Positions 16,030 through 50,000 of a stretch of 64,000 nt of DNA are shown here, piece by piece. Positions within the stretch are counted from its first letter, which is position 1, and each line of letters starts with the position of its first letter. A program made the translations under genes and the position numbers. The notes under the pieces were generated by a model that saw nothing but the letters and a program-made list of their open reading frames with translations, was not told where the DNA came from and ran no database searches. Source of the stretch: Schmidtea polychroa (taxonomy: Eukaryota); NCBI GenBank assembly GCA_044892525.1, contig CM097885.1, forward strand, positions 109,430,001-109,494,000, read 5' to 3'.

Positions 16030-16093
16030 TTCACTGTTTGTCCTATCGAAGGTCACCTTCTCAGTGGAAATTGAAGAAATAGATTTATTATAT
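16030..16093 (-). CDS. Giant-protein gene, tail exon 4 (64 nt; RYNKSISSISTEKVTFDRTNSE)
   Basis: Acceptor TTTAG at 16095-16094 after a 41-nt intron; donor GAA|GTATGA at 16030/16029. Confidence 0.8.
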
Positions 16094-16134
16094 CTAAATT
16101 CAAATAACAAAATATAAAAGGTAAAATAAAATAC

Positions 16135-16786
16135 CTAGAAAGGCGATTTCTAACATCAGAAATACGATTACGATGTTCTTGCAACTGTTTCTCAACATCA
16201 ACACGAGAAAGAGATGCAGAACTTAAAATAACTTCATTTTGCTTTTTTAATAAATCAAGAAAATGAAAAAGTTGAGATGGACCATTAGAATCAGGAAAAG
16301 GAGAAGAGATTCTTGAAGGATCGTTTTTTGAGATAGAAGCATTAGAAGATCGACGACTTGAGAAATAATTACTGAAATTATTCTCGAGAGATTCAAGCCT
16401 CAAATTAGCATTGTCAGTTACATGAAGCAAATGATCATTATCAAAGAAATGATCAGATTCGATTTCAACACGGGCTTGATTTTTGTCAAAAGCTGACGCA
16501 AAAGCGTCCGTTTGACCTTCTAAATATTTCAATTCCATTTCAAAGATATGCATCCAGTTAGAAGGTTTTTTAGAATTCAAATTCAAATTAGATTCTTCAT
16601 CTAAAGGCTGATATTGAGAAGGAAAAAGAGGTAGATCAGAGGAATTAAAATGAGAAAAAACATTGGAATCAGCATAATATCCGATTTCAGAAGATTTTTC
16701 AAAGTCAGAAATTGATTGATCATGTTGAGATTGAAACGAAATAGAAATATCATCGGTCAAATCATCAGAATGACTGTTAACATCAA
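16135..16786 (-). CDS. Giant-protein gene, tail exon 3 (652 nt; Ser/Asp-rich, with a coiled-coil-like LLKKQNE...RISDVRNRLSR segment)
   Basis: Corresponds to ORF 16053..16760. Acceptor TTTCTAG at 16788-16787 and donor AG|GTATTT at 16135/16134. Length is 2+648+2, which keeps the frame. Confidence 0.88.
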
Positions 16787-16825
16787 CTAGAAACGAAATA
16801 ATAAATTAAAATAAATAAAAATTAC

Positions 16826-16867
16826 TTCGAGAACTAGATGGAGAAAAGGAATCTAGTAATTTTCTAT
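16826..16867 (-). CDS. Giant-protein gene, tail exon 2 (42 nt; DRKLLDSFSPSSSR)
   Basis: Acceptor TTTTAG at 16869-16868, with an alternative in-frame AG 6 nt upstream at 16875-16874. Donor A|GTAATT at 16826/16825. The frame is preserved on both sides. Confidence 0.75.
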
Positions 16868-16919
16868 CTAAAACTAAAAAGTAAATAAAGAAAACGGAAG
16901 AAATCAAAAATAAACATAC

Positions 16920-17018
16920 CAATAGGCTGAACAATATTCAAAATATTAGGAGAAGGTTTAGAGTTTGATTCAGGGACAGAACCGACAGAATAATGACGAC
17001 CAAGTAAATGAACCGGAA
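16920..17018 (-). CDS. Giant-protein gene, tail exon 1 (99 nt, phase 1/1; VPVHLLGRHYSVGSVPESNSKPSPNILNIVQPI)
   Basis: Acceptor TTTTTTAG at 17020-17019 and donor G|GTATGT at 16920/16919. In frame with the giant exon across a 39-nt intron. Confidence 0.85.
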
Positions 17019-17057
17019 CTAAAAAAGAATTTAACAAACAAAAATAAAATTATATAC

Positions 17058-29000: not shown

Positions 29001-32000
29001 TGTCTGCATTTCTAATTACTGTCGAATCTGGTACAATGGATTCTGAGATATCTTTGCACAATTTCCTTAATCTTTCAGCCTCTTCTTTATTCAATTCCAA
29101 TTCCTTCGATTTGCAATCAATCACTTCTTGTAGTTTAGGAAGAACTGATTCCAATAAAGTTTTATTTGCTTTCCATTCGTTGGATCTTTCTGAGTCTGGC
29201 GTTTCATTGATTTTACTTTCAACTTTATCCATAGCCTTTGACAATTTCGATAAATCTTGTCCTTTCAATTTTATTTGATCATTCTTTGAATTTTCCACTA
29301 ATTCTTTCAAGATTGTTTCAATTGGTCGTCGACTATTTTCAATTTCATCATGTCGAGATCTTCTAATTCGTTCCGCAATATCAGGAATGCTAGATTGAAT
29401 TTGTACTGCTTCACATAAAATACCCATCAGAGGCTCATTAACAGTTGCGGTTAGTTTTACGAGATCTTTTCCCTCCGAAACTTCTTTCAATAACATTTCT
29501 TCTAATTCAATCAGTTTCGATTCACTAATTTCATTTTTCAAAGCATCTTTAGCGACTTTTATTCCATCAAGTAAATTCTCAACGTCTTTCCTGTTCAATA
29601 GTTTCTCTTTATCACCTTCTTCGTCATCAAATAAACATTTAATTGCCTCCAATATTTTGTTACTATCCTCATCGCTTTTATCTAATCGCTTTTCACTCTT
29701 TATGCCTAATGCTTTTAATTGTTCACAAATAGATTTGTCAATTTTCACTTTAGATCCACTTTCTAAAGACCTGTTTAAATCGTTTATAATTTCTTCCACA
29801 AATCTTCTTTCTTTTTCTCCAGTCTTTGATTTCAGAATCAATGATTTCATAATTTCCAAACTTTCAACTAGTTCTTTGCCTTTCAAGTTGTTCAATTCAC
29901 CTTTCTCCAGAGCATCGCATAATAATTTCTGACCACTTTCAAGTCCTACTTTTCGTTCCATAGTTACTTCATCAATAATTTCGTCAACAATGTCTGCATT
30001 TCTAATTACTGTCGAATCTGGTACAATGGATTCTGAGATATCTTTGCACAATTTCCTTAATCTTTCAGCCTCTTCTTTATTCAATTCCAATTCCTTCGAT
30101 TTGCAATCAATCACTTCTTGTAGTTTAGGAAGAACTGATTCCAATAAAGTTTTATTTGCTTTCCATTCGTTGGATCTTTCTGAGTCTGGCGTTTCATTGA
30201 TTTTACTTTCAACTTTATCCATAGCCTTTGACAATTTCGATAAATCTTGTCCTTTCAATTTTATTTGATCATTCTTTGAATTTTCCACTAATTCTTTCAA
30301 GATTGTTTCAATTGGTCGTCGACTATTTTCAATTTCATCATGTCGAGATCTTCTAATTCGTTCCGCAATATCAGGAATGCTAGATTGAATTTGTACTGCT
30401 TCACATAAAATACCCATCAGAGGCTCATTAACAGTTGCGGTTAGTTTTACGAGATCTTTTCCCTCCGAAACTTCTTTCAATAACATTTCTTCTAATTCAA
30501 TCAGTTTCGATTCACTAATTTCATTTTTCAAAGCATCTTTAGCGACTTTTATTCCATCAAGTAAATTCTCAACGTCTTTCCTGTTCAATAGTTTCTCTTT
30601 ATCACCTTCTTCGTCATCAAATAAACATTTAATTGCCTCCAATATTTTGTTACTATCCTCATAGCTATTATCTAATCGCTTTTCACTCTTTATGCCTAAT
30701 GCTTTTAATTGTTCACAAATAGATTTGTCAATTTTCACTTTAGATCCACTTTCTAAAGACCTGTTTAAATCGTTTATAATTTCTTCCACAAATCTTCTTT
30801 CTTTTTCTCCAGTCTTTGATTTCGGAATCAATGATTTCATAATTTCCAAACTTTCAACTAGTTCTTTGCCTTTCAAGTTGTTCAATTCACCTTTCTCCAG
30901 AGCATCGCATAATAATTTCTGACCACTTTCAAGTCCTACTTTTCGTTCCATAGTTACTTCATCAATAATTTCGTCAACAATGTCTGCATTTCTAATTACT
31001 GTCGAATCTGGTACAATGGATTCTGAGATATCTTTGCACAATTTCCTTAATCTTTCAGCCTCTTCTTTATTCAATTCCAATTCCTTCGATTTGCAATCAA
31101 TCACTTCTTGTAGTTTAGGAAGAACTGATTCCAATAAAGTTTTATTTGCTTTCCATTCGTTGGATCTTTCTGAGTCTGGCGTTTCATTGATTTTACTTTC
31201 AACTTTATCCATAGCCTTTGACAATTTCGATAAATCTTGTCCTTTCAATTTTATTTGATCATTCTTTGAATTTTCCACTAATTCTTTCAAGATTGTTTCA
31301 ATTGGTCGTCGACTATTTTCAATTTCATCATGTCGAGATCTTCTAATTCGTTCCGCAATATCAGGAATGCTAGATTGAATTTGTACTGCTTCACATAAAA
31401 TACCCATCAGAGGCTCATTAACAGTTGCGGTTAGTTTTACGAGATCTTTTCCCTCCGAAACTTCTTTCAATAACATTTCTTCTAATTCAATCAGTTTCGA
31501 TTCACTAATTTCATTTTTCAAAGCATCTTTAGCGACTTTTATTCCATCAAGTAAATTCTCAACGTCTTTCCTGTTCAATAGTTTCTCTTTATCACCTTCT
31601 TCGTCATCAAATAAACATTTAATTGCCTCCAATATTTTGTTACTATCCTCATAGCTATTATCTAATCGCTTTTCACTCTTTATGCCTAATGCTTTTAATT
31701 GTTCACAAATAGATTTGTCAATTTTCACTTTAGATCCACTTTCTAAAGACCTGTTTAAATCGTTTATAATTTCTTCCACAAATCTTCTTTCTTTTTCTCC
31801 AGTCTTTGATTTCGGAATCAATGATTTCATAATTTCCAAACTTTCAACTAGTTCTTTGCCTTTCAAGTTGTTCAATTCACCTTTCTCCAGAGCATCGCAT
31901 AATAATTTCTGACCACTTTCAAGTCCTACTTTTCGTTCCATAGTTACTTCATCAATAATTTCGTCAACAATGTCTGCATTTCTAATTACTGTCGAATCTG

Positions 32001-35000
32001 GTACAATGGATTCTGAGATATCTTTGCACAATTTCCTTAATCTTTCAGCCTCTTCTTTATTCAATTCCAATTCCTTCGATTTGCAATCAATCACTTCTTG
32101 TAGTTTAGGAAGAACTGATTCCAATAAAGTTTTATTTGCTTTCCATTCGTTGGATCTTTCTGAGTCTGGCGTTTCATTGATTTTACTTTCAACTTTATCC
32201 ATAGCCTTTGACAATTTCGATAAATCTTGTCCTTTCAATTTTATTTGATCATTCTTTGAATTTTCCACTAATTCTTTCAAGATTGTTTCAATTGGTCGTC
32301 GACTATTTTCAATTTCATCATGTCGAGATCTTCTAATTCGTTCCGCAATATCAGGAATGCTAGATTGAATTTTTACTGCTTCACATAAAATACCCATCAG
32401 AGGCTCATTAACAGTTGCGGTTAGTTTTACGAGATCTTTTCCCTCCGAAACTTCTTTCAATAACATTTCTTCTAATTCAATCAGTTTCGATTCACTAATT
32501 TCATTTTTCAAAGCATCTTTAGCGACTTTTATTCCATCAAGTAAATTCTCAACGTCTTTCCTGTTCAATAGTTTCTCTTTATCACCTTCTTCGTCATCAA
32601 ATAAACATTTAATTGCCTCCAATATTTTGTTACTATCCTCATCGCTATTATCTAATCGCTTTTCACTCTTTATGCCTAATGCTTTTAATTGTTCACAAAT
32701 AGATTTGTCAATTTTCACTTTAGATCCACTTTCTAAAGACCTGTTTAAATCGTTTATAATTTCTTCCACAAATCTTCTTTCTTTTTCTCCAGTCTTTGAT
32801 TTCGGAATCAATGATTTCATAATTTCCAAACTTTCAACTAGTTCTTTGCCTTTCAAGTTGTTCAATTCACCTTTCTCCAGAGCATCGCATAATAATTTCT
32901 GACCACTTTCAAGTCCTACTTTTCGTTCCATAGTTACTTCATCAATAATTTCGTCAACAATGTCTGCATTTCTAATTACTGTCGAATCTGGTACAATGGA
33001 TTCTGAGATATCTTTGCACAATTTCCTTAATCTTTCAGCCTCTTCTTTATTCAATTCCAATTCCTTCGATTTGCAATCAATCACTTCTTGTAGTTTAGGA
33101 AGAACTGATTCCAATAAAGTTTTATTTGCCTTCCATTCGTTGGATCTTTCTGAGTCTGGCGTTTCATTGATTTTACTTTCAACTTTATCCATAGCCTTTG
33201 ACAATTTCGATAAATCTTTTCCTTTCAATTTTATTTGATCATTCTTTGAATTTTCCACTAATTCTTTCAAGATTGTTTCAATTGGTCGTCGACTATTTTC
33301 AATTTCATCATGTCGAGATCTTCTAATTCGTTCCGCAATATCAGGAATGCTAGATTGAATTTGTACTGCTTCACATAAAATACCCATCAGAGGCTCATTA
33401 ACAGTTGCGGTTAGTTTTACGAGATCTTTTCCCTCCGAAACTTCTTTCAATAACATTTCTTCTAATTCAATCAGTTTCGATTCACTAATTTCATTTTTCA
33501 AAGCATCTTTAGCGACTTTTATTCCATCAAGTAAATTCTCAACGTCTTTCCTGTTCAATAGTTTCTCTTTATCACCTTCTTCGTCATCAAATAAACATTT
33601 AATTGCCTCCAATATTTTGTTACTATCCTCATCGCTATTATCTAATCGCTTTTCACTCTTTACGCCTAATGCTTTTAATTGTTCACAAATAGATTTGTCA
33701 ATTTTCACTTTAGATCCACTTTCTAAAGACCTGTTTAAATCGTTTATAATTTCTTCCACAAATCTTCTTTCTTTTTCTCCAGTCTTTGATTTCGGAATCA
33801 ATGATTTCATAATTTCCAAACTTTCAACTAGTTCTTTGCCTTTCAAGTTGTTCAATTCACCTTTCTCCAGAGCATCGCATAATAATTTCTGACCACTTTC
33901 AAGTCCTACTTTTCGTTCCATAGTTACTTCATCAATAATTTCGTCAACAATGTCTGCATTTCTAATTACTGTCGAATCTGGTACAATGGATTCTGAGATA
34001 TCTTTGCACAATTTCCTTAATCTTTCAGCCTCTTCTTTATTCAATTCCAATTCCTTCGATTTGCAATCAATCACTTCTTGTAGTTTAGGAAGAACTGATT
34101 CCAATAAAGTTTTATTTGCTTTCCATTCGTTGGATCTTTCTGAGTCTGGCGTTTCATTGATTTTACTTTCAACTTTATCCATAGCCTTTGACAATTTCGA
34201 TAAATCTTGTCCTTTCAATTTTATTTGATCATTCTTTGAATTTTCCACTAATTCTTTCAAGATTGTTTCAATTGGTCGTCGACTATTTTCAATTTCATCA
34301 TGTCGAGATCTTCTAATTCGTTCCGCAATATCAGGAATGCTAGATTGAATTTGTACTGCTTCACATAAAATACCCATCAGAGGCTCATTAACAGTTGCGG
34401 TTAGTTTTACGAGATCTTTTCCCTCCGAAACTTCTTTCAATAACATTTCTTCTAATTCAATCAGTTTCGATTCACTAATTTCATTTTTCAAAGCATCTTT
34501 AGCGACTTTTATTCCATCAAGTAAATTCTCAACGTCTTTCCTGTTCAATAGTTTCTCTTTCTCACCTTCTTCGTCATCAAATAAACATTTAATTGCCTCC
34601 AATATTTTGTTACTATCCTCATCGCTATTATCTAATCGCTTTTCACTCTTTATGCCTAATGCTTTTAATTGTTCACAAATAGATTTGTCAATTTTCACTT
34701 TAGATCCACTTTCTAAAGACCTGTTTAAATCGTTTATAATTTCTTCCACAAATCTTCTTTCTTTTTCTCCAGTCTTTGATTTCGGAATCAATGATTTCAT
34801 AATTTCCAAACTTTCAACTAGTTCTTTGCCTTTCAAGTTGTTCAATTCACCTTTCTCCAGAGCATCGCATAATAATTTCTGACCACTTTCAAGTCCTACT
34901 TTTCGTTCCATAGTTACTTCATCAATAATTTCGTCAACAATGTCTGCATTTCTAATTACTGTCGAATCTGGTACAATGGATTCTGAGATATCTTTGCACA

Positions 35001-38000
35001 ATTTCCTTAATCTTTCAGCCTCTTCTTTATTCAATTCCAATTCCTTCGATTTGCAATCAATCACTTCTTGTAGTTTAGGAAGAACTGATTCCAATAAAGT
35101 TTTATTTGCTTTCCATTCGTTGGATCTTTCTGAGTCTGGCGTTTCATTGATTTTACTTTCAACTTTATCCATAGCCTTTGACAATTTCGATAAATCTTGT
35201 CCTTTCAATTTTATTTGATCATTCTTTGAATTTTCCACTAATTCTTTCAAGATTGTTTCAATTGGTCGTCGACTATTTTCAATTTCATCATGTCGAGATC
35301 TTCTAATTCGTTCCGCAATATCAGGAATGCTAGATTGAATTTGTACTGCTTCACATAAAATACCCATCAGAGGCTCATTAACAGTTGCGGTTAGTTTTAC
35401 GAGATCTTTTCCCTCCGAAACTTCTTTCAATAACATTTCTTCTAATTCAATCAGTTTCGATTCACTAATTTCATTTTTCAAAGCATCTTTAGCGACTTTT
35501 ATTCCATCAAGTAAATTCTCAACGTCTTTCCTGTTCAATAGTTTCTCTTTCTCACCTTCTTCGTCATCAAATAAACATTTAATTGCCTCCAATATTTTGT
35601 TACTATCCTCATCGCTATTATCTAATCGCTTTTCACTCTTTATGCCTAATGCTTTTAATTGTTCACAAATAGATTTGTCAATTTTCACTTTAGATCCACT
35701 TTCTAAAGACCTGTTTAAATCGTTTATAATTTCTTCCACAAATCTTCTTTCTTTTTCTCCAGTCTTTGATTTCGGAATCAATGATTTCATAATTTCCAAA
35801 CTTTCAACTAGTTCTTTGCCTTTCAAGTTGTTCAATTCACCTTTCTCCAGAGCATCGCATAATAATTTCTGACCACTTTCAAGTCCTACTTTTCGTTCCA
35901 TAGTTACTTCATCAATAATTTCGTCAACAATGTCTGCATTTCTAATTACTGTCGAATCTGGTACAATGGATTCTGAGATATCTTTGCACAATTTCCTTAA
36001 TCTTTCAGCCTCTTCTTTATTCAATTCCAATTCCTTCGATTTGCAATCAATCACTTCTTGTAGTTTAGGAAGAACTGATTCCAATAAAGTTTTATTTGCT
36101 TTCCATTCGTTGGATCTTTCTGAGTCTGGCGTTTCATTGATTTTACTTTCAACTTTATCCATAGCCTTTGACAATTTCGATAAATCTTGTCCTTTCAATT
36201 TTATTTGATCATTCTTTGAATTTTCCACTAATTCTTTCAAGATTGTTTCAATTGGTCGTCGACTATTTTCAATTTCATCATGTCGAGATCTTCTAATTCG
36301 TTCCGCAATATCAGGAATGCTAGATTGAATTTTTACTGCTTCACATAAAATACCCATCAGAGGCTCATTAACAGTTGCGGTTAGTTTTACGAGATCTTTT
36401 CCCTCCGAAACTTCTTTCAATAACATTTCTTCTAATTCAATCAGTTTCGATTCACTAATTTCATTTTTCAAAGCATCTTTAGCGACTTTTATTCCATCAA
36501 GTAAATTCTCAACGTCTTTCCTGTTCAATAGTTTCTCTTTATCACCTTCTTCGTCATCAAATAAACATTTAATTGCCTCCAATATTTTGTTACTATCCTC
36601 ATCGCTATTATCTAATCGCTTTTCACTCTTTATGCCTAATGCTTTTAATTGTTCACAAATAGATTTGTCAATTTTCACTTTAGATCCACTTTCTAAAGAC
36701 CTGTTTAAATCGTTTATAATTTCTTCCACAAATCTTCTTTCTTTTTCTCCAGTCTTTGATTTCGGAATCAATGATTTCATAATTTCCAAACTTTCAACTA
36801 GTTCTTTGCCTTTCAAGTTGTTCAATTCACCTTTCTCCAGAGCATCGCATAATAATTTCTGACCACTTTCAAGTCCTACTTTTCGTTCCATAGTTACTTC
36901 ATCAATAATTTCGTCAACAATGTCTGCATTTCTAATTACTGTCGAATCTGGTACAATGGATTCTGAGATATCTTTGCACAATTTCCTTAATCTTTCAGCC
37001 TCTTCTTTATTCAATTCCAATTCCTTCGATTTGCAATCAATCACTTCTTGTAGTTTAGGAAGAACTGATTCCAATAAAGTTTTATTTGCCTTCCATTCGT
37101 TGGATCTTTCTGAGTCTGGCGTTTCATTGATTTTACTTTCAACTTTATCCATAGCCTTTGACAATTTCGATAAATCTTTTCCTTTCAATTTTATTTGATC
37201 ATTCTTTGAATTTTCCACTAATTCTTTCAAGATTGTTTCAATTGGTCGTCGACTATTTTCAATTTCATAATGTCGAGATCTTCTAATTCGTTCCGCAATA
37301 TCAGGAATGCTAGATTGAATTTGTACTGCTTCACATAAAATACCCATCAGAGGCTCATTAACAGTTGCGGTTAGTTTTACGAGATCTTTTCCCTCCGAAA
37401 CTTCTTTCAATAACATTTCTTCTAATTCAATCAGTTTCGATTCACTAATTTCATTTTTCAAAGCATCTTTAGCGACTTTTATTCCATCAAGTAAATTCTC
37501 AACGTCTTTCCTGTTCAATAGTTTCTCTTTATCACCTTCTTCGTCATCAAATAAACATTTAATTGCCTCCAATATTTTGTTACTATCCTCATCGCTATTA
37601 TCTAATCGCTTTTCACTCTTTACGCCTAATGCTTTTAATTGTTCACAAATAGATTTGTCAATTTTCACTTTAGATCCACTTTCTAAAGACCTGTTTAAAT
37701 CGTTTATAATTTCTTCCACAAATCTTCTTTCTTTTTCTCCAGTCTTTGATTTCGGAATCAATGATTTCATAATTTCCAAACTTTCAACTAGTTCTTTGCC
37801 TTTCAAGTTGTTCAATTCACCTTTCTCCAGAGCATCGCATAATAATTTCTGACCACTTTCAAGTCCTACTTTTCGTTCCATAGTTACTTCATCAATAATT
37901 TCGTCAACAATGTCTGCATTTCTAATTACTGTCGAATCTGGTACAATGGATTCTGAGATATCTTTGCACAATTTCCTTAATCTTTCAGCCTCTTCTTTAT

Positions 38001-41000
38001 TCAATTCCAATTCCTTCGATTTGCAATCAATCACTTCTTGTAGTTTAGGAAGAACTGATTCCAATAAAGTTTTATTTGCTTTCCATTCGTTGGATCTTTC
38101 TGAGTCTGGCGTTTCATTGATTTTACTTTCAACTTTATCCATAGCCTTTGACAATTTCGATAAATCTTGTCCTTTCAATTTTATTTGATCATTCTTTGAA
38201 TTTTCCACTAATTCTTTCAAGATTGTTTCAATTGGTCGTCGACTATTTTCAATTTCATCATGTCGAGATCTTCTAATTCGTTCCGCAATATCAGGAATGC
38301 TAGATTGAATTTGTACTGCTTCACATAAAATACCCATCAGAGGCTCATTAACAGTTGCGGTTAGTTTTACGAGATCTTTTCCCTCCGAAACTTCTTTCAA
38401 TAACATTTCTTCTAATTCAATCAGTTTCGATTCACTAATTTCATTTTTCAAAGCATCTTTAGCGACTTTTATTCCATCAAGTAAATTCTCAACGTCTTTC
38501 CTGTTCAATAGTTTCTCTTTCTCACCTTCTTCGTCATCAAATAAACATTTAATTGCCTCCAATATTTTGTTACTATCCTCATCGCTATTATCTAATCGCT
38601 TTTCACTCTTTATGCCTAATGCTTTTAATTGTTCACAAATAGATTTGTCAATTTTCACTTTAGATCCACTTTCTAAAGACCTGTTTAAATCGTTTATAAT
38701 TTCTTCCACAAATCTTCTTTCTTTTTCTCCAGTCTTTGATTTCGGAATCAATGATTTCATAATTTCCAAACTTTCAACTAGTTCTTTGCCTTTCAAGTTG
38801 TTCAATTCACCTTTCTCCAGAGCATCGCATAATAATTTCTGACCACTTTCAAGTCCTACTTTTCGTTCCATAGTTACTTCATCAATAATTTCGTCAACAA
38901 TGTCTGCATTTCTAATTACTGTCGAATCTGGTACAATGGATTCTGAGATATCTTTGCACAATTTCCTTAATCTTTCAGCCTCTTCTTTATTCAATTCCAA
39001 TTCCTTCGATTTGCAATCAATCACTTCTTGTAGTTTAGGAAGAACTGATTCCAATAAAGTTTTATTTGCTTTCCATTCGTTGGATCTTTCTGAGTCTGGC
39101 GTTTCATTGATTTTACTTTCAACTTTATCCATAGCCTTTGACAATTTCGATAAATCTTGTCCTTTCAATTTTATTTGATCATTCTTTGAATTTTCCACTA
39201 ATTCTTTCAAGATTGTTTCAATTGGTCGTCGACTATTTTCAATTTCATCATGTCGAGATCTTCTAATTCGTTCCGCAATATCAGGAATGCTAGATTGAAT
39301 TTGTACTGCTTCACATAAAATACCCATCAGAGGCTCATTAACAGTTGCGGTTAGTTTTACGAGATCTTTTCCCTCCGAAACTTCTTTCAATAACATTTCT
39401 TCTAATTCAATCAGTTTCGATTCACTAATTTCATTTTTCAAAGCATCTTTAGCGACTTTTATTCCATCAAGTAAATTCTCAACGTCTTTCCTGTTCAATA
39501 GTTTCTCTTTCTCACCTTCTTCGTCATCAAATAAACATTTAATTGCCTCCAATATTTTGTTACTATCCTCATCGCTATTATCTAATCGCTTTTCACTCTT
39601 TATGCCTAATGCTTTTAATTGTTCACAAATAGATTTGTCAATTTTCACTTTAGATCCACTTTCTAAAGACCTGTTTAAATCGTTTATAATTTCTTCCACA
39701 AATCTTCTTTCTTTTTCTCCAGTCTTTGATTTCGGAATCAATGATTTCATAATTTCCAAACTTTCAACTAGTTCTTTGCCTTTCAAGTTGTTCAATTCAC
39801 CTTTCTCCAGAGCATCGCATAATAATTTCTGACCACTTTCAAGTCCTACTTTTCGTTCCATAGTTACTTCATCAATAATTTCGTCAACAATGTCTGCATT
39901 TCTAATTACTGTCGAATCTGGTACAATGGATTCTGAGATATCTTTGCACAATTTCCTTAATCTTTCAGCCTCTTCTTTATTCAATTCCAATTCCTTCGAT
40001 TTGCAATCAATCACTTCTTGTAGTTTAGGAAGAACTGATTCCAATAAAGTTTTATTTGCTTTCCATTCGTTGGATCTTTCTGAGTCTGGCGTTTCATTGA
40101 TTTTACTTTCAACTTTATCCATAGCCTTTGACAATTTCGATAAATCTTGTCCTTTCAATTTTATTTGATCATTCTTTGAATTTTCCACTAATTCTTTCAA
40201 GATTGTTTCAATTGGTCGTCGACTATTTTCAATTTCATCATGTCGAGATCTTCTAATTCGTTCCGCAATATCAGGAATGCTAGATTGAATTTGTACTGCT
40301 TCACATAAAATACCCATCAGAGGCTCATTAACAGTTGCGGTTAGTTTTACGAGATCTTTTCCCTCCGAAACTTCTTTCAATAACATTTCTTCTAATTCAA
40401 TCAGTTTCGATTCACTAATTTCATTTTTCAAAGCATCTTTAGCGACTTTTATTCCATCAAGTAAATTCTCAACGTCTTTCCTGTTCAATAGTTTCTCTTT
40501 CTCACCTTCTTCGTCATCAAATAAACATTTAATTGCCTCCAATATTTTGTTACTATCCTCATCGCTATTATCTAATCGCTTTTCACTCTTTATGCCTAAT
40601 GCTTTTAATTGTTCACAAATAGATTTGTCAATTTTCACTTTAGATCCACTTTCTAAAGACCTGTTTAAATCGTTTATAATTTCTTCCACAAATCTTCTTT
40701 CTTTTTCTCCAGTCTTTGATTTCGGAATCAATGATTTCATAATTTCCAAACTTTCAACTAGTTCTTTGCCTTTCAAGTTGTTCAATTCACCTTTCTCCAG
40801 AGCATCGCATAATAATTTCTGACCACTTTCAAGTCCTACTTTTCGTTCCATAGTTACTTCATCAATAATTTCGTCAACAATGTCTGCATTTCTAATTACT
40901 GTCGAATCTGGTACAATGGATTCTGAGATATCTTTGCACAATTTCCTTAATCTTTCAGCCTCTTCTTTATTCAATTCCAATTCCTTCGATTTGCAATCAA

Positions 41001-44000
41001 TCACTTCTTGTAGTTTAGGAAGAACTGATTCCAATAAAGTTTTATTTGCTTTCCATTCGTTGGATCTTTCTGAGTCTGGCGTTTCATTGATTTTACTTTC
41101 AACTTTATCCATAGCCTTTGACAATTTCGATAAATCTTGTCCTTTCAATTTTATTTGATCATTCTTTGAATTTTCCACTAATTCTTTCAAGATTGTTTCA
41201 ATTGGTCGTCGACTATTTTCAATTTCATCATGTCGAGATCTTCTAATTCGTTCCGCAATATCAGGAATGCTAGATTGAATTTTTACTGCTTCACATAAAA
41301 TACCCATCAGAGGCTCATTAACAGTTGCGGTTAGTTTTACGAGATCTTTTCCCTCCGAAACTTCTTTCAATAACATTTCTTCTAATTCAATCAGTTTCGA
41401 TTCACTAATTTCATTTTTCAAAGCATCTTTAGCGACTTTTATTCCATCAAGTAAATTCTCAACGTCTTTCCTGTTCAATAGTTTCTCTTTATCACCTTCT
41501 TCGTCATCAAATAAACATTTAATTGCCTCCAATATTTTGTTACTATCCTCATCGCTATTATCTAATCGCTTTTCACTCTTTATGCCTAATGCTTTTAATT
41601 GTTCACAAATAGATTTGTCAATTTTCACTTTAGATCCACTTTCTAAAGACCTGTTTAAATCGTTTATAATTTCTTCCACAAATCTTCTTTCTTTTTCTCC
41701 AGTCTTTGATTTCGGAATCAATGATTTCATAATTTCCAAACTTTCAACTAGTTCTTTGCCTTTCAAGTTGTTCAATTCACCTTTCTCCAGAGCATCGCAT
41801 AATAATTTCTGACCACTTTCAAGTCCTACTTTTCGTTCCATAGTTACTTCATCAATAATTTCGTCAACAATGTCTGCATTTCTAATTACTGTCGAATCTG
41901 GTACAATGGATTCTGAGATATCTTTGCACAATTTCCTTAATCTTTCAGCCTCTTCTTTATTCAATTCCAATTCCTTCGATTTGCAATCAATCACTTCTTG
42001 TAGTTTAGGAAGAACTGATTCCAATAAAGTTTTATTTGCCTTCCATTCGTTGGATCTTTCTGAGTCTGGCGTTTCATTGATTTTACTTTCAACTTTATCC
42101 ATAGCCTTTGACAATTTCGATAAATCTTTTCCTTTCAATTTTATTTGATCATTCTTTGAATTTTCCACTAATTCTTTCAAGATTGTTTCAATTGGTCGTC
42201 GACTATTTTCAATTTCATAATGTCGAGATCTTCTAATTCGTTCCGCAATATCAGGAATGCTAGATTGAATTTGTACTGCTTCACATAAAATACCCATCAG
42301 AGGCTCATTAACAGTTGCGGTTAGTTTTACGAGATCTTTTCCCTCCGAAACTTCTTTCAATAACATTTCTTCTAATTCAATCAGTTTCGATTCACTAATT
42401 TCATTTTTCAAAGCATCTTTAGCGACTTTTATTCCATCAAGTAAATTCTCAACGTCTTTCCTGTTCAATAGTTTCTCTTTATCACCTTCTTCGTCATCAA
42501 ATAAACATTTAATTGCCTCCAATATTTTGTTACTATCCTCATCGCTATTATCTAATCGCTTTTCACTCTTTACGCCTAATGCTTTTAATTGTTCACAAAT
42601 AGATTTGTCAATTTTCACTTTAGATCCACTTTCTAAAGACCTGTTTAAATCGTTTATAATTTCTTCCACAAATCTTCTTTCTTTTTCTCCAGTCTTTGAT
42701 TTCGGAATCAATGATTTCATAATTTCCAAACTTTCAACTAGTTCTTTGCCTTTCAAGTTGTTCAATTCACCTTTCTCCAGAGCATCGCATAATAATTTCT
42801 GACCACTTTCAAGTCCTACTTTTCGTTCCATAGTTACTTCATCAATAATTTCGTCAACAATGTCTGCATTTCTAATTACTGTCGAATCTGGTACAATGGA
42901 TTCTGAGATATCTTTGCACAATTTCCTTAATCTTTCAGCCTCTTCTTTATTCAATTCCAATTCCTTCGATTTGCAATCAATCACTTCTTGTAGTTTAGGA
43001 AGAACTGATTCCAATAAAGTTTTATTTGCTTTCCATTCGTTGGATCTTTCTGAGTCTGGCGTTTCATTGATTTTACTTTCAACTTTATCCATAGCCTTTG
43101 ACAATTTCGATAAATCTTGTCCTTTCAATTTTATTTGATCATTCTTTGAATTTTCCACTAATTCTTTCAAGATTGTTTCAATTGGTCGTCGACTATTTTC
43201 AATTTCATCATGTCGAGATCTTCTAATTCGTTCCGCAATATCAGGAATGCTAGATTGAATTTGTACTGCTTCACATAAAATACCCATCAGAGGCTCATTA
43301 ACAGTTGCGGTTAGTTTTACGAGATCTTTTCCCTCCGAAACTTCTTTCAATAACATTTCTTCTAATTCAATCAGTTTCGATTCACTAATTTCATTTTTCA
43401 AAGCATCTTTAGCGACTTTTATTCCATCAAGTAAATTCTCAACGTCTTTCCTGTTCAATAGTTTCTCTTTCTCACCTTCTTCGTCATCAAATAAACATTT
43501 AATTGCCTCCAATATTTTGTTACTATCCTCATCGCTATTATCTAATCGCTTTTCACTCTTTATGCCTAATGCTTTTAATTGTTCACAAATAGATTTGTCA
43601 ATTTTCACTTTAGATCCACTTTCTAAAGACCTGTTTAAATCGTTTATAATTTCTTCCACAAATCTTCTTTCTTTTTCTCCAGTCTTTGATTTCGGAATCA
43701 ATGATTTCATAATTTCCAAACTTTCAACTAGTTCTTTGCCTTTCAAGTTGTTCAATTCACCTTTCTCCAGAGCATCGCATAATAATTTCTGACCACTTTC
43801 AAGTCCTACTTTTCGTTCCATAGTTACTTCATCAATAATTTCGTCAACAATGTCTGCATTTCTAATTACTGTCGAATCTGGTACAATGGATTCTGAGATA
43901 TCTTTGCACAATTTCCTTAATCTTTCAGCCTCTTCTTTATTCAATTCCAATTCCTTCGATTTGCAATCAATCACTTCTTGTAGTTTAGGAAGAACTGATT

Positions 44001-47000
44001 CCAATAAAGTTTTATTTGCTTTCCATTCGTTGGATCTTTCTGAGTCTGGCGTTTCATTGATTTTACTTTCAACTTTATCCATAGCCTTTGACAATTTCGA
44101 TAAATCTTGTCCTTTCAATTTTATTTGATCATTCTTTGAATTTTCCACTAATTCTTTCAAGATTGTTTCAATTGGTCGTCGACTATTTTCAATTTCATCA
44201 TGTCGAGATCTTCTAATTCGTTCCGCAATATCAGGAATGCTAGATTGAATTTGTACTGCTTCACATAAAATACCCATCAGAGGCTCATTAACAGTTGCGG
44301 TTAGTTTTACGAGATCTTTTCCCTCCGAAACTTCTTTCAATAACATTTCTTCTAATTCAATCAGTTTCGATTCACTAATTTCATTTTTCAAAGCATCTTT
44401 AGCGACTTTTATTCCATCAAGTAAATTCTCAACGTCTTTCCTGTTCAATAGTTTCTCTTTCTCACCTTCTTCGTCATCAAATAAACATTTAATTGCCTCC
44501 AATATTTTGTTACTATCCTCATCGCTATTATCTAATCGCTTTTCACTCTTTATGCCTAATGCTTTTAATTGTTCACAAATAGATTTGTCAATTTTCACTT
44601 TAGATCCACTTTCTAAAGACCTGTTTAAATCGTTTATAATTTCTTCCACAAATCTTCTTTCTTTTTCTCCAGTCTTTGATTTCGGAATCAATGATTTCAT
44701 AATTTCCAAACTTTCAACTAGTTCTTTGCCTTTCAAGTTGTTCAATTCACCTTTCTCCAGAGCATCGCATAATAATTTCTGACCACTTTCAAGTCCTACT
44801 TTTCGTTCCATAGTTACTTCATCAATAATTTCGTCAACAATGTCTGCATTTCTAATTACTGTCGAATCTGGTACAATGGATTCTGAGATATCTTTGCACA
44901 ATTTCCTTAATCTTTCAGCCTCTTCTTTATTCAATTCCAATTCCTTCGATTTGCAATCAATCACTTCTTGTAGTTTAGGAAGAACTGATTCCAATAAAGT
45001 TTTATTTGCTTTCCATTCGTTGGATCTTTCTGAGTCTGGCGTTTCATTGATTTTACTTTCAACTTTATCCATAGCCTTTGACAATTTCGATAAATCTTGT
45101 CCTTTCAATTTTATTTGATCATTCTTTGAATTTTCCACTAATTCTTTCAAGATTGTTTCAATTGGTCGTCGACTATTTTCAATTTCATCATGTCGAGATC
45201 TTCTAATTCGTTCCGCAATATCAGGAATGCTAGATTGAATTTTTACTGCTTCACATAAAATACCCATCAGAGGCTCATTAACAGTTGCGGTTAGTTTTAC
45301 GAGATCTTTTCCCTCCGAAACTTCTTTCAATAACATTTCTTCTAATTCAATCAGTTTCGATTCACTAATTTCATTTTTCAAAGCATCTTTAGCGACTTTT
45401 ATTCCATCAAGTAAATTCTCAACGTCTTTCCTGTTCAATAGTTTCTCTTTATCACCTTCTTCGTCATCAAATAAACATTTAATTGCCTCCAATATTTTGT
45501 TACTATCCTCATCGCTATTATCTAATCGCTTTTCACTCTTTATGCCTAATGCTTTTAATTGTTCACAAATAGATTTGTCAATTTTCACTTTAGATCCACT
45601 TTCTAAAGACCTGTTTAAATCGTTTATAATTTCTTCCACAAATCTTCTTTCTTTTTCTCCAGTCTTTGATTTCGGAATCAATGATTTCATAATTTCCAAA
45701 CTTTCAACTAGTTCTTTGCCTTTCAAGTTGTTCAATTCACCTTTCTCCAGAGCATCGCATAATAATTTCTGACCACTTTCAAGTCCTACTTTTCGTTCCA
45801 TAGTTACTTCATCAATAATTTCGTCAACAATGTCTGCATTTCTAATTACTGTCGAATCTGGTACAATGGATTCTGAGATATCTTTGCACAATTTCCTTAA
45901 TCTTTCAGCCTCTTCTTTATTCAATTCCAATTCCTTCGATTTGCAATCAATCACTTCTTGTAGTTTAGGAAGAACTGATTCCAATAAAGTTTTATTTGCC
46001 TTCCATTCGTTGGATCTTTCTGAGTCTGGCGTTTCATTGATTTTACTTTCAACTTTATCCATAGCCTTTGACAATTTCGATAAATCTTTTCCTTTCAATT
46101 TTATTTGATCATTCTTTGAATTTTCCACTAATTCTTTCAAGATTGTTTCAATTGGTCGTCGACTATTTTCAATTTCATCATGTCGAGATCTTCTAATTCG
46201 TTCCGCAATATCAGGAATGCTAGATTGAATTTGTACTGCTTCACATAAAATACCCATCAGAGGCTCATTAACAGTTGCGGTTAGTTTTACGAGATCTTTT
46301 CCCTCCGAAACTTCTTTCAATAACATTTCTTCTAATTCAATCAGTTTCGATTCACTAATTTCATTTTTCAAAGCATCTTTAGCGACTTTTATTCCATCAA
46401 GTAAATTCTCAACGTCTTTCCTGTTCAATAGTTTCTCTTTATCACCTTCTTCGTCATCAAATAAACATTTAATTGCCTCCAATATTTTGTTACTATCCTC
46501 ATCGCTATTATCTAATCGCTTTTCACTCTTTACGCCTAATGCTTTTAATTGTTCACAAATAGATTTGTCAATTTTCACTTTAGATCCACTTTCTAAAGAC
46601 CTGTTTAAATCGTTTATAATTTCTTCCACAAATCTTCTTTCTTTTTCTCCAGTCTTTGATTTCGGAATCAATGATTTCATAATTTCCAAACTTTCAACTA
46701 GTTCTTTGCCTTTCAAGTTGTTCAATTCACCTTTCTCCAGAGCATCGCATAATAATTTCTGACCACTTTCAAGTCCTACTTTTCGTTCCATAGTTACTTC
46801 ATCAATAATTTCGTCAACAATGTCTGCATTTCTAATTACTGTCGAATCTGGTACAATGGATTCTGAGATATCTTTGCACAATTTCCTTAATCTTTCAGCC
46901 TCTTCTTTATTCAATTCCAATTCCTTCGATTTGCAATCAATCACTTCTTGTAGTTTAGGAAGAACTGATTCCAATAAAGTTTTATTTGCTTTCCATTCGT

Positions 47001-50000
47001 TGGATCTTTCTGAGTCTGGCGTTTCATTGATTTTACTTTCAACTTTATCCATAGCCTTTGACAATTTCGATAAATCTTGTCCTTTCAATTTTATTTGATC
47101 ATTCTTTGAATTTTCCACTAATTCTTTCAAGATTGTTTCAATTGGTCGTCGACTATTTTCAATTTCATCATGTCGAGATCTTCTAATTCGTTCCGCAATA
47201 TCAGGAATGCTAGATTGAATTTGTACTGCTTCACATAAAATACCCATCAGAGGCTCATTAACAGTTGCGGTTAGTTTTACGAGATCTTTTCCCTCCGAAA
47301 CTTCTTTCAATAACATTTCTTCTAATTCAATCAGTTTCGATTCACTAATTTCATTTTTCAAAGCATCTTTAGCGACTTTTATTCCATCAAGTAAATTCTC
47401 AACGTCTTTCCTGTTCAATAGTTTCTCTTTCTCACCTTCTTCGTCATCAAATAAACATTTAATTGCCTCCAATATTTTGTTACTATCCTCATCGCTATTA
47501 TCTAATCGCTTTTCACTCTTTATGCCTAATGCTTTTAATTGTTCACAAATAGATTTGTCAATTTTCACTTTAGATCCACTTTCTAAAGACCTGTTTAAAT
47601 CGTTTATAATTTCTTCCACAAATCTTCTTTCTTTTTCTCCAGTCTTTGATTTCGGAATCAATGATTTCATAATTTCCAAACTTTCAACTAGTTCTTTGCC
47701 TTTCAAGTTGTTCAATTCACCTTTCTCCAGAGCATCGCATAATAATTTCTGACCACTTTCAAGTCCTACTTTTCGTTCCATAGTTACTTCATCAATAATT
47801 TCGTCAACAATGTCTGCATTTCTAATTACTGTCGAATCTGGTACAATGGATTCTGAGATATCTTTGCACAATTTCCTTAATCTTTCAGCCTCTTCTTTAT
47901 TCAATTCCAATTCCTTCGATTTGCAATCAATCACTTCTTGTAGTTTAGGAAGAACTGATTCCAATAAAGTTTTATTTGCTTTCCATTCGTTGGATCTTTC
48001 TGAGTCTGGCGTTTCATTGATTTTACTTTCAACTTTATCCATAGCCTTTGACAATTTCGATAAATCTTGTCCTTTCAATTTTATTTGATCATTCTTTGAA
48101 TTTTCCACTAATTCTTTCAAGATTGTTTCAATTGGTCGTCGACTATTTTCAATTTCATCATGTCGAGATCTTCTAATTCGTTCCGCAATATCAGGAATGC
48201 TAGATTGAATTTTTACTGCTTCACATAAAATACCCATCAGAGGCTCATTAACAGTTGCGGTTAGTTTTACGAGATCTTTTCCCTCCGAAACTTCTTTCAA
48301 TAACATTTCTTCTAATTCAATCAGTTTCGATTCACTAATTTCATTTTTCAAAGCATCTTTAGCGACTTTTATTCCATCAAGTAAATTCTCAACGTCTTTC
48401 CTGTTCAATAGTTTCTCTTTATCACCTTCTTCGTCATCAAATAAACATTTAATTGCCTCCAATATTTTGTTACTATCCTCATCGCTATTATCTAATCGCT
48501 TTTCACTCTTTATGCCTAATGCTTTTAATTGTTCACAAATAGATTTGTCAATTTTCACTTTAGATCCACTTTCTAAAGACCTGTTTAAATCGTTTATAAT
48601 TTCTTCCACAAATCTTCTTTCTTTTTCTCCAGTCTTTGATTTCGGAATCAATGATTTCATAATTTCCAAACTTTCAACTAGTTCTTTGCCTTTCAAGTTG
48701 TTCAATTCACCTTTCTCCAGAGCATCGCATAATAATTTCTGACCACTTTCAAGTCCTACTTTTCGTTCCATAGTTACTTCATCAATAATTTCGTCAACAA
48801 TGTCTGCATTTCTAATTACTGTCGAATCTGGTACAATGGATTCTGAGATATCTTTGCACAATTTCCTTAATCTTTCAGCCTCTTCTTTATTCAATTCCAA
48901 TTCCTTCGATTTGCAATCAATCACTTCTTGTAGTTTAGGAAGAACTGATTCCAATAAAGTTTTATTTGCCTTCCATTCGTTGGATCTTTCTGAGTCTGGC
49001 GTTTCATTGATTTTACTTTCAACTTTATCCATAGCCTTTGACAATTTCGATAAATCTTTTCCTTTCAATTTTATTTGATCATTCTTTGAATTTTCCACTA
49101 ATTCTTTCAAGATTGTTTCAATTGGTCGTCGACTATTTTCAATTTCATCATGTCGAGATCTTCTAATTCGTTCCGCAATATCAGGAATGCTAGATTGAAT
49201 TTGTACTGCTTCACATAAAATACCCATCAGAGGCTCATTAACAGTTGCGGTTAGTTTTACGAGATCTTTTCCCTCCGAAACTTCTTTCAATAACATTTCT
49301 TCTAATTCAATCAGTTTCGATTCACTAATTTCATTTTTCAAAGCATCTTTAGCGACTTTTATTCCATCAAGTAAATTCTCAACGTCTTTCCTGTTCAATA
49401 GTTTCTCTTTATCACCTTCTTCGTCATCAAATAAACATTTAATTGCCTCCAATATTTTGTTACTATCCTCATCGCTATTATCTAATCGCTTTTCACTCTT
49501 TACGCCTAATGCTTTTAATTGTTCACAAATAGATTTGTCAATTTTCACTTTAGATCCACTTTCTAAAGACCTGTTTAAATCGTTTATAATTTCTTCCACA
49601 AATCTTCTTTCTTTTTCTCCAGTCTTTGATTTCGGAATCAATGATTTCATAATTTCCAAACTTTCAACTAGTTCTTTGCCTTTCAAGTTGTTCAATTCAC
49701 CTTTCTCCAGAGCATCGCATAATAATTTCTGACCACTTTCAAGTCCTACTTTTCGTTCCATAGTTACTTCATCAATAATTTCGTCAACAATGTCTGCATT
49801 TCTAATTACTGTCGAATCTGGTACAATGGATTCTGAGATATCTTTGCACAATTTCCTTAATCTTTCAGCCTCTTCTTTATTCAATTCCAATTCCTTCGAT
49901 TTGCAATCAATCACTTCTTGTAGTTTAGGAAGAACTGATTCCAATAAAGTTTTATTTGCTTTCCATTCGTTGGATCTTTCTGAGTCTGGCGTTTCATTGA

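What the first reader, a model, noticed from the sequence alone, without database searches (positions are those of the whole stretch)
32300..49600. Satellite-style higher-order repeats inside the protein-coding array
Seen: linked variants recur as blocks. VQI>VKI at 32371, 36331, 41281, 45241 and 48211. GQD>GKD (with a linked synonymous gct>gcc) near 33218, 37178, 42128, 46088 and 49058. GIK>GVK at 33662, 37622, 42572, 46532 and 49502. Spacings are 3960, 4950, 3960 and 2970 bp, so blocks are 4, 5, 4 and 3 units long. The difference is entirely the copy number of the GDK>GEK unit (2, 3, 2 and 1 copies: 34561, 35551 | 38521, 39511, 40501 | 43471, 44461 | 47431). HDE>HYE marks only blocks 2 and 3 (37268, 42218). 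Inference: multi-unit unequal crossover plus single-unit expansion and contraction, as in centromeric alpha-satellite HORs, but here in an open reading frame. The array is probably length-polymorphic.
Basis: partly seen in the sequence, partly recalled or inferred. Interest (0 to 1): 0.72.

Follow-up and report, generated by a model that had tools for sequence, protein, structure and literature searches.

The report
Block duplications inside giant coding repeat
A flatworm gene has one 80-kb exon made of 79 almost identical 990-base units, and marker changes show that runs of 3 to 5 units were recently copied as blocks; this is the ordinary trace of misaligned recombination, seen here in an unusually large coding array.

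Summary
Units 16-33 read I-O-P-P | I-Q-P-P-P | I-Q-P-P | I-O-P | I-O, with spacings of 3960, 4950, 3960 and 2970 bp. Shuffling unit order never reproduced this (0 of 10^6).

The array is much larger than the finding: 79 units without indels, window 17144 to about 95331, which is 31 kb past the window end. All lie in one minus-strand open exon of about 26,800 codons. Other block duplicates occur at lags of 2, 3 and 6 units.

An RNA-like run covers the exon, skips the intron and is spliced to an upstream exon. A DNA-like run has the unit 84-97 times as deep as its flank.

The alpha-satellite comparison holds for mechanism only. Unit types differ by 1-5 bases in 990, the period is irregular, and only 18 of 79 units take part. 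Closer precedents are coding arrays such as NBPF/Olduvai triplets and filaggrin.

Length polymorphism is plausible but not shown, because no long reads could be laid.

The scan had already reported this giant exon and the kinesin motor upstream from an overlapping window (s1-229089, s1-229113), but not the block pattern.

The parts
17144..64000 (-). In-window part of the 990-bp (330-codon) tandem array: units 1-47 plus 327 bp of unit 48. The array continues to about 95331 in extended window coordinates (G000:C1:109447144-109525331), 79 units in all.
   Evidence: Lag-990 identity is 99.6%. The unit matrix has no indels. A six-frame search found 79 copies, all in this array.
17050..17143 (-). 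Non-repeat coding tail after the last unit, up to the first in-frame stop at 17052-17050. That stop lies inside a candidate 39-nt GT..AG intron (17057-17019).
   Evidence: Translation; sequence; frame check of the candidate introns.
31994..49813 (-). The block-structured stretch, units 16-33: I O P P | I Q P P P | I Q P P | I O P | I O. I carries Q204K, O carries K281 synonymous + Q252K + I104V, Q is O plus D222Y, and P carries D134E.
   Evidence: Matrix; unit-type string; codon check; order shuffles.
31994..35953 (-). Block 1 (4 units: I, O, P, P)
35954..40903 (-). Block 2 (5 units: I, Q, P, P, P)
40904..44863 (-). Block 3 (4 units: I, Q, P, P)
44864..47833 (-). Block 4 (3 units: I, O, P)
47834..49813 (-). 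Block 5 (2 units: I, O), followed by a consensus unit
33664..45242 (.). Stretch with an exact 4,950-bp (5-unit) period. 33664-40292 equals 38614-45242 with no mismatch. This is the longest exact internal repeat of the whole array (6,629 bp).
24074..28033 (-). A second, smaller multi-unit echo. Units 8 and 11 share three variants at a 3-unit offset, and the two units between them (9, 10) carry the I-type variant.
16053..17018 (-). Candidate downstream exons. Three tiny GT..AG introns (39, 46 and 39 nt) would keep the frame open from the giant exon into the 235-codon ORF 16760-16053. There is no RNA evidence for this.

Best explanation
**What it is.** The stretch is part of one giant coding exon of a planarian gene, about 80.4 kb and about 26,800 codons. 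The exon has 713 unique codons, then 79 tandem 330-codon units, then a short tail. Genome statistics match Schmidtea polychroa.

**How the units stay alike.** Repeated misaligned exchange between copies keeps them almost identical. This could be unequal sister-chromatid or homologue crossover, or repair or replication template switching in a shifted register.

**How the blocks arose.** When the register shift is several units, a run of units is duplicated or deleted together. In units 16-33, four marker types record at least four such events, at shifts of 3, 4 and 5 units. They also record one point change (D222Y) that arose in one block before that block was copied, and gains or losses of single P units. 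Every shift is a multiple of 990 bp, so the frame is never broken; the protein only changes length in 330-residue steps.

**Shown:**
- the pattern itself and its non-random order;
- exact multi-kilobase identities at multi-unit offsets;
- mosaic units;
- the open frame;
- transcription and splicing of the exon.

**Inferred:**
- the recombination mechanism;
- its recency;
- that alleles differ in length;
- that the upstream kinesin-3-type motor exons belong to the same protein.
For: **Pattern and order**
- Searches give the unit matrix and the type string IOPP IQPPP IQPP IOP IO.
- the order is not reached by any of 10^6 whole-array shuffles, and by 6.9e-5 of local shuffles.
- neighbouring units are more alike than distant ones (z = -10.5 at lag 1, decaying to about -2 at lag 11), as local exchange predicts.

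**Block copies**
- an exact 6,629-bp identity at a 5-unit offset, and 3.6-3.9 kb exact runs at 3- and 4-unit offsets.
- other block echoes (units 62-65 vs 68-71; 75/77 vs 76/78; 8 vs 11).
- the outer units, above all 61-79, are the most diverged. This is the edge effect expected of arrays homogenised by unequal exchange (established model, from my own knowledge).

**Exchange within units**
- 53 of 465 pairs of informative columns show all four allele combinations, so units are mosaics.

**Coding status and expression**
- no stop and no indel over about 26,800 codons.
- run X7 covers the exon but not the intron. It leaves the genome at the predicted AG acceptor (97462/97460) and continues into an exon at about 100,664-100,75x.
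- run X15 has contigs ending in poly-A in the sense of the minus strand.

**Reality of the array**
- in run X1, contig word depth is 4,550-5,250 in the unit against 54 in the flank.
- contigs of two other organism labels join unit end to unit start at period 990.
- the genome's size and contig count match an assembly built from 14-22-kb HiFi reads, longer than the longest exact internal repeat.
Against: - No raw long reads could be laid. The phasing of variants into blocks therefore rests on the assembly alone.
- The block region is exactly where the longest exact repeats lie, so block counts could be off by one block.
- Unequal crossover cannot be told apart from long-tract gene conversion or replication-based duplication on sequence alone.
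- Selection within the array is weak or undetectable: 16 synonymous and 34 non-synonymous changes, pN/pS about 0.53.
- The word-depth ratio (84-97) exceeds the 79 assembled units. This may mean a longer second allele, a partial collapse, or library bias.
Confidence: 0.8

Rival explanations
1. Assembly artefact: the assembler or the polishing step falsely duplicated, collapsed or mis-phased near-identical units, so the blocks do not exist in any one DNA molecule.
For: - Units are 99.5-100% alike.
- The block region holds the longest exact repeats of the array.
- Only contigs, not reads, could be laid.
- The depth ratio of 84-97 does not equal 79.
Against: - The longest exact internal repeat is 6.6 kb, or 6.8 kb allowing one mismatch. 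That is well under the 14-22-kb HiFi reads reported for the assembly whose statistics match this genome, so single reads should span 3-5 blocks.
- Five separate occurrences of a three-site linked haplotype, with the same neighbours each time, are not what random mis-phasing gives.
- An independent read set supports a copy number of this order.
- The polishing described there applies only homozygous calls, which would erase rare variants rather than create periodic ones (inference).
Confidence: 0.1
2. Long-tract gene conversion without any change in length: patches several units long were copied over neighbouring units, giving the periodic look while the array length stayed constant.
For: - Mosaic units and four-gamete failures show exchange of patches between units.
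- The P-type and I-type variants also occur far away, in units 56-78 and in units 9 and 10.
Against: - Blocks differ in the number of P units (2, 3, 2, 1, 0). That is most simply a change in length.
- Conversion tracts of 4-7 kb in a shifted register need the same misalignment as unequal crossover, so this is a variant of the best explanation rather than a true alternative.
Confidence: 0.07
3. A functional super-repeat: the I-O-P(n) order is kept by selection because the protein needs a longer structural period, as in the titin or nebulin super-repeats.
For: - The pattern lies in an open, transcribed exon.
- Most marker changes alter an amino acid.
Against: - Types differ by one to three mostly conservative residues (Q>K, I>V, D>E) out of 330.
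- The period varies from 3 to 5 units.
- Only 18 of 79 units take part.
- The copies are identical at synonymous sites too, which points to recency rather than selection.
Confidence: 0.03

Closest known systems
NBPF 3-mer higher-order repeats (Olduvai triplets) in human NBPF genes (PMC9584774)
   Same: Both are higher-order tandem organisation inside protein-coding sequence. Multi-unit blocks are amplified in tandem, and copy number changes by whole blocks while the frame is kept.
   Different: - The three NBPF monomers of a triplet are clearly diverged, and the period is a regular 3. Here the unit types differ by 0.1-0.5% and the period varies from 3 to 5.
- NBPF units are exon-intron cassettes of about 1.6 kb. 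Here all units lie in one uninterrupted exon.
Filaggrin (FLG) exon 3: 972-bp units with intragenic copy-number alleles of 10, 11 or 12 units (PMC3236450)
   Same: Both have one giant exon of near-identical units of about 1 kb (324 against 330 codons). Particular units are duplicated, and the frame is kept.
   Different: - FLG has 10-12 units; this array has 79.
- FLG length alleles are demonstrated in populations. Here length variation is only inferred.
- The proteins are unrelated: one search gave no Pfam match above threshold and one search found no relatives.
C. elegans ANC-1 (nesprin orthologue): six 903-residue tandem repeats almost 100% identical at the nucleotide level (PMC8139857)
   Same: Both are giant, predicted all-helical cytoskeleton-associated proteins whose bulk is a tandem array of very long, nearly identical coding units with no recognisable domain family.
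   Different: - ANC-1 has 6 units; this array has 79.
- No sequence similarity was found.
- ANC-1 has CH and KASH domains. Here the only recognisable neighbour is a kinesin-3-type motor upstream, and its link to the exon is not proven.
Centromeric alpha-satellite higher-order repeats
   Same: Both are tandem arrays homogenised by unequal exchange, in which multi-monomer blocks are copied together and the edge monomers are more diverged.
   Different: Alpha-satellite is non-coding, with 171-bp monomers that differ by tens of percent within a HOR and a fixed n-mer period over megabases. None of these features holds here.

Membership tests
Satellite-type higher-order repeat (alpha-satellite sense) | Head-to-tail tandem array of monomers of constant length | tested here: met
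   79 units of exactly 990 bp with no indels
Satellite-type higher-order repeat (alpha-satellite sense) | Monomers within one higher-order unit are clearly diverged from each other, while higher-order copies are near-identical | tested here: not met
   Unit types I, O, Q and P differ by 1-5 of 990 bases. The mean pairwise difference over the whole array is 4.7 bases.
Satellite-type higher-order repeat (alpha-satellite sense) | A fixed n-monomer period over most of the array | tested here: not met
   Blocks are 4, 5, 4, 3 and 2 units long and cover only units 16-33 of 79. Elsewhere there are isolated echoes at lags of 2, 3 and 6.
Coding tandem array with block-wise copy-number change (NBPF, FLG and LPA KIV-2 kind) | Unit length is a multiple of three and the reading frame stays open through the whole array | tested here: met
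   990 = 330 x 3. One open frame runs from 97470 to 17050 with no stop.
Coding tandem array with block-wise copy-number change (NBPF, FLG and LPA KIV-2 kind) | The array is transcribed as part of a spliced mRNA | tested here: met
   Run X7 contigs cover the array and the unique 5' part of the exon, are absent from the intron, and are spliced at the acceptor to an exon 3.2 kb upstream. These are contigs only, and the RNA label of the run is a guess by the tool.
Coding tandem array with block-wise copy-number change (NBPF, FLG and LPA KIV-2 kind) | Runs of several units duplicated together | tested here: met
   Exact 6,629-bp identity at a 5-unit offset, and linked markers that recur with the same neighbours
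Coding tandem array with block-wise copy-number change (NBPF, FLG and LPA KIV-2 kind) | Alleles or individuals differ in unit number | tested here: inconclusive
   - The genome holds a single copy of the locus and no second haplotype.
- Word-depth ratios of 84-97 (DNA-like X1) exceed the 79 assembled units, but they are not a copy-number measure.
- No raw long reads were on offer.
Kinesin-3 motor protein with a giant tail | Kinesin motor domain encoded upstream on the same strand | tested here: met
   PF00225 matches three minus-strand ORF pieces at extended coordinates 137072-136863, 135126-134884 and 120702-120466. The best solved relatives of one piece are KIF13B, KIF14 and KIF1A.
Kinesin-3 motor protein with a giant tail | Motor exons and giant exon joined in one transcript | not tested
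   The one spliced contig seen reaches only the next exon upstream, at about 100.7 kb.

The most novel reading that the evidence does not exclude
The array may be a fast-changing length module of a titin-scale motor or tether protein. Block duplications and deletions like those recorded in units 16-33 would make alleles differ by tens of 330-residue modules, so individuals or haplotypes would carry helical tails of very different length on a kinesin-3-type motor. The unit sequence itself would meanwhile stay nearly constant between Schmidtea species. Two hints point this way. Array contigs of two other organism labels are about 99% identical to this array, while contigs on the adjacent unique coding part are about 91-92% identical. 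The two S. mediterranea haplotypes have longest transcripts of 76.7 and 94.2 kb, though these were not tied to this gene.
Probability: 0.2. Interest if true: 0.7.

Novelty: new member of a known kind. Interest (0 to 1): 0.42.

Why it matters
- **A record of recent exchange.** The block pattern shows the size of recent misaligned exchanges (3-5 kb shifts) inside what may be one of the longest coding exons in any animal. It shows how such an exon can grow or shrink without ever losing its frame.
- **A testable prediction.** The protein's length should vary between alleles in steps of 330 residues. That is directly testable with long reads.
- **Practical markers.** The marker variants give unique anchors for checking the assembly and for genotyping the array.
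- **Extent of the gene.** The work extends the exon reported earlier by the scan (more than 35 kb, at least 33 units) to its full extent: 80.4 kb, 79 units and about 26,800 codons, with a spliced upstream exon and a probable continuation downstream.
- **Limits.** The phenomenon itself, multi-unit duplication in a homogenised coding array, is already known from NBPF, filaggrin and similar genes.

Tried and rejected
- **Tandem Repeats Finder** found nothing because its longest period is 500. A lag-identity script was used instead.
- **Own-genome DNA search** with one unit masked the array as too common and returned only a 103-base fragment on another chromosome. The protein search worked.
- **Pfam** on the unit, the 713-residue N-part and the neighbouring ORFs gave nothing above the curated cut-offs for unit or N-part.
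- **Search of 1.84 billion representative proteins** with the unit gave two weak hits. One (P0002) is TPR-repeat sequence and probably not a true relative.
- **Word-indexed protein search** with the N-part found nothing.
- **ESM Atlas** gave no usable hit.
- **AlphaFold2** on one unit without an alignment gave an all-helical model at mean pLDDT 48.8. That is too low for a fold search, so none was run.
- **Internal half-unit (165-residue) duplication:** a BLAST self-hit without composition correction looked significant. Local alignment scores against 500 composition-preserving shuffles were not (z 0.4-2.6), and no ungapped offset scored positive. I rejected it.
- **Bacterial promoter and terminator scan** of the 3' end has no meaning for an animal gene and is disregarded.
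- **Supplements of PMC11410931**, searched for the identity of the 76.7-kb and 94.2-kb transcripts, held nothing.
- **Phasing test with reads:** not possible, because all runs on offer are kept as contigs.
Full report
**1. What is in the sequence**

The window has no N and is T-rich on the + strand over its right three quarters. Identity at a lag of 990 bp is 99.6% from about 17144 to the window end. The left border is sharp at 17143/17144.

The array lies in one minus-strand reading frame that ends with a stop at 17050 and is still open at the window end. I fetched 80 kb beyond the window from the same chromosome. The array runs on to about 95331 in extended window coordinates.

In all there are 79 units of exactly 990 bp with no insertion or deletion. 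There are 63 variable columns, 15 of which only mark the right border unit. The frame stays open up to 97470. That makes one exon of about 80.4 kb and about 26,800 codons: 713 unique codons, 79 x 330 repeat codons, and about 30 tail codons.

A six-frame search of the whole genome found all 79 units here, plus a 38-residue fragment on another chromosome. The unique N-terminal part occurs once.

**2.

Every listed variant is present.
- VKI and GEK sit at exactly the stated codons.
- GKD, GVK and HYE are one base off the stated coordinate.

Naming each distinct unit sequence by a letter gives this string, unit 1 being the leftmost: ABCDEFGHIJKLMNN IOPP IQPPP IQPP IOP IO L R....
- I carries Q204K.
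- O carries a silent K281 change plus Q252K plus I104V.
- Q is O plus D222Y.
- P carries D134E.

The spacings of 3960, 4950, 3960 and 2970 bp follow from this. The order is far from random. None of 10^6 shuffles of all units gives five I-to-O/Q adjacencies (the maximum seen was 4). Shuffling only units 16-34 reaches that count in 6.9e-5 of trials.

**3.

- The same kind of echo occurs elsewhere. Units 62-65 resemble 68-71 at a 6-unit offset. Units 75 and 77 alternate with 76 and 78. Units 8 and 11 share three variants at a 3-unit offset.
- The I variant also sits in units 9 and 10. The P variant also sits in 16 units of the gene's 5' part.
- The most diverged units lie at the array's ends, above all units 61-79 with 3-11 differences from consensus. 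Units 34-49 are mostly pure consensus.
- Similarity falls off smoothly with distance along the array.
- 53 of 465 pairs of informative columns show all four allele combinations, so units are mosaics of one another.

**4. Mechanism**

The longest exact internal repeat of the array is 33664-40292 = 38614-45242. That is 6,629 bp at an offset of exactly five units. Exact runs of 3.6-3.9 kb occur at offsets of three and four units.

The pattern needs several things:
- at least four exchanges in registers shifted by 3-5 units;
- one point change (D222Y) that arose before its block was copied, since blocks 2 and 3 are adjacent and both carry it;
- changes in the number of P units.

Together with the edge effect, the decay of similarity with distance and the mosaic units, this is the expected picture of an array homogenised by misaligned exchange. 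I take that model from established work on tandem-array evolution, not from a test here.

Sequence alone cannot tell unequal crossover from shifted-register gene conversion or replication template switching.

Duplicates identical over 6.6 kb, silent sites included, must be very young. I give no date, because no mutation rate for this animal was at hand.

**5. Is it a real gene?**

*Selection within the array.* Within-array variants are 16 silent and 34 replacing, with pN/pS about 0.53. That is only weak evidence of constraint, as expected for very young variants.

*Run X7 (RNA-like).* Stronger evidence comes from reads laid on extended coordinates 94474-100473.
- X7 has contigs over the array and the unique 5' part of the exon, and none over the 3-kb intron.
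- One contig leaves the genome at 97462, at the predicted AG acceptor, and continues with letters that I located at 100666-100695.
- Those letters form the end of a small exon followed by GTAATA. That exon is open in the frame needed for the phase-1 junction.
- X7 differs from the assembly at 0.6-1.3% of positions in the unique part, so it comes from another strain.

*Run X15 (another organism label).* It has many short contigs on the array that end in poly-A in the sense of the minus strand.

*Run X1 (DNA-like).* It covers the intron exactly. Its contig word depths are 4,550-5,250 in the unit against 54 in the flank, a ratio of 84-97. This supports a copy number of the assembled order or somewhat more. 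The tool warns that such depths are not copy numbers.

*Tandem period elsewhere.* Contigs of X15 and X18 join unit end to unit start with 127 letters between. That restores the 990-bp period, so the tandem array also exists in those two organisms.

**6. Whose genome, and can the assembly be trusted?**

Earlier notes of the scan call the genome a planarian. Its size and contig count are 781,270,316 bp in 1012 contigs. These nearly equal those of schPol2, Schmidtea polychroa, in Table 1 of PMC11410931: 781,290,622 bp in 1013 contigs. The match is an inference.

That assembly used 14-22-kb HiFi reads and hifiasm. The longest exact internal repeat is 6.6 kb, or 6.8 kb with one mismatch. Single reads should therefore span several blocks, so the layout is resolvable in principle.

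I could not check this with reads. All runs on offer are kept as contigs, and only one laying call was allowed. I put an assembly artefact at about 0.1.

**7. The gene around the array**

*Upstream, minus strand.*
- A retroelement sits in the intron, with a Gag match and a captured proteasome-subunit fragment.
- Further up are three ORF pieces that match the kinesin motor domain.
- The best solved relatives of one piece are KIF13B, KIF14 and KIF1A, that is kinesin-3 type.
- Whether the motor and the array are one protein remains open. The spliced contig only reaches the next exon.
- The alternative start MGLTSSC noted by another reader (s1-229202) exists at 100473 and would join in frame. The one spliced contig seen uses a different, more upstream exon.

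*Downstream.* The stop at 17050 lies inside a candidate 39-nt GT..AG intron. Two more tiny candidate introns (46 and 39 nt) would keep the frame open into the 235-codon ORF 16760-16053. The gene may therefore continue.

I translated this joined model only in a script.

**8. The protein unit**

- The 330-residue unit is rich in E, K and L.
- It is predicted all-helical at low confidence, mean pLDDT 48.8.
- It has no Pfam family above threshold.
- It has no relatives among 1.84 billion representative proteins, apart from one 132-residue ungapped match of 30% identity inside a retroelement-like ORF on a 2-kb metagenome contig.
- ESM Atlas gave no usable hit for the unit.
- The N-part found nothing in the word-indexed protein search.
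- An apparent half-unit self-similarity did not survive a shuffle control.

**9. Comparison with what is known**

Higher-order organisation inside coding sequence is known.
- NBPF/Olduvai triplets are described explicitly as 3-mer HORs (PMC9584774).
- Filaggrin has 972-bp units with alleles of 10-12 units (PMC3236450).
- C. elegans ANC-1 has six 903-residue repeats nearly identical at the nucleotide level (PMC8139857).

Against the defining features of satellite HORs, this array meets only the tandem-array criterion. It fails on monomer divergence and on a fixed period. It meets the features of a coding array with block-wise copy-number change, except for demonstrated length polymorphism, which is untested. 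I therefore file it as a new and very large member of a known kind.

**10. A cross-species hint**

In runs X15 and X18, array contigs differ from this array at about 0-1.5% of positions. The few contigs on the adjacent unique coding part differ at about 7-9%. The one difference listed in both runs (L005:540) is silent.

This fits purifying selection on the unit's protein sequence between species. It rests on a handful of short contigs chosen at 90% likeness or more, so I treat it as a lead only.

**11. Relation to earlier notes of the scan**

The giant exon and the neighbouring motor were already reported from an overlapping window as more than 35 kb and at least 33 units (s1-229089, s1-229113).
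- the full extent of the exon and array;
- the block analysis;
- the splice to an upstream exon;
- the possible 3' continuation.

**12. Operators' rules**

- The laying call used 6,000 letters.
- No N had to be handled.

Noticed in passing
window 17019-17057, 16874-16919, 16787-16825 and ORF 16053-16760 (minus strand): The stop that ends the giant frame lies inside a candidate 39-nt GT..AG intron. Two more tiny candidate introns (46 and 39 nt) keep the frame open into a 235-codon ORF, so the gene may go on downstream of the array. There is no RNA evidence yet.
   Followed up: partly
L021 (JGI metagenome 3300013315, 2,071-bp contig), protein P0001 residues 252-383: The only sequence relative of the 330-residue unit is a 132-residue ungapped 30% match (pairwise BLASTP E 2e-14). 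It lies inside an ORF whose ends, by eye, resemble retroelement protease and integrase parts. This hints that part of the unit is shared with, or was captured by, a mobile element in another organism.
   Followed up: partly
L005:474-1336 against L005:1391-3420 (extended window 94474-95336 against 95391-97420), runs X15 and X18: Contigs of two other organism labels are about 99% identical to the array but only about 91-93% identical to the adjacent unique coding part of the same exon. The unit thus seems far better conserved between species than its flank.
   Followed up: partly
L001 = G000:C3:66410072-66413174: A lone 103-base, 87%-identical fragment of the unit's end (38 residues at 66% at protein level) lies on another chromosome. 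It is the only copy outside the array.
   Followed up: no
window 3586-5201 (+ strand): Two adjacent ORFs give a weak DUF659 match and a hAT C-terminal dimerisation match (PF05699, 24.2 bits, above its cut-off). They probably mark a decayed hAT transposase.
   Followed up: no
extended window 101,762-104,655 (L005/L006), minus strand: A retroelement sits in the intron upstream of the giant exon. It has a Gag p24 C-terminal match just below its cut-off and an in-frame proteasome-subunit fragment (PF00227, E 4e-27).
   Followed up: partly
extended window 107,956-108,229: A long (TA/TATA-type) simple repeat that reads YIYIYI in all frames lies within the putative intron between the motor exons and the giant exon.
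   Followed up: no
PMC11410931, Table 1: The longest annotated transcript is 76,733 nt in one S. mediterranea haplotype and 94,201 nt in the other, but only 32,100 nt in S. polychroa. This suggests that an orthologue of this gene may be annotated and length-variable in S. mediterranea, and that the 80-kb exon is not annotated in S. polychroa.
   Followed up: partly
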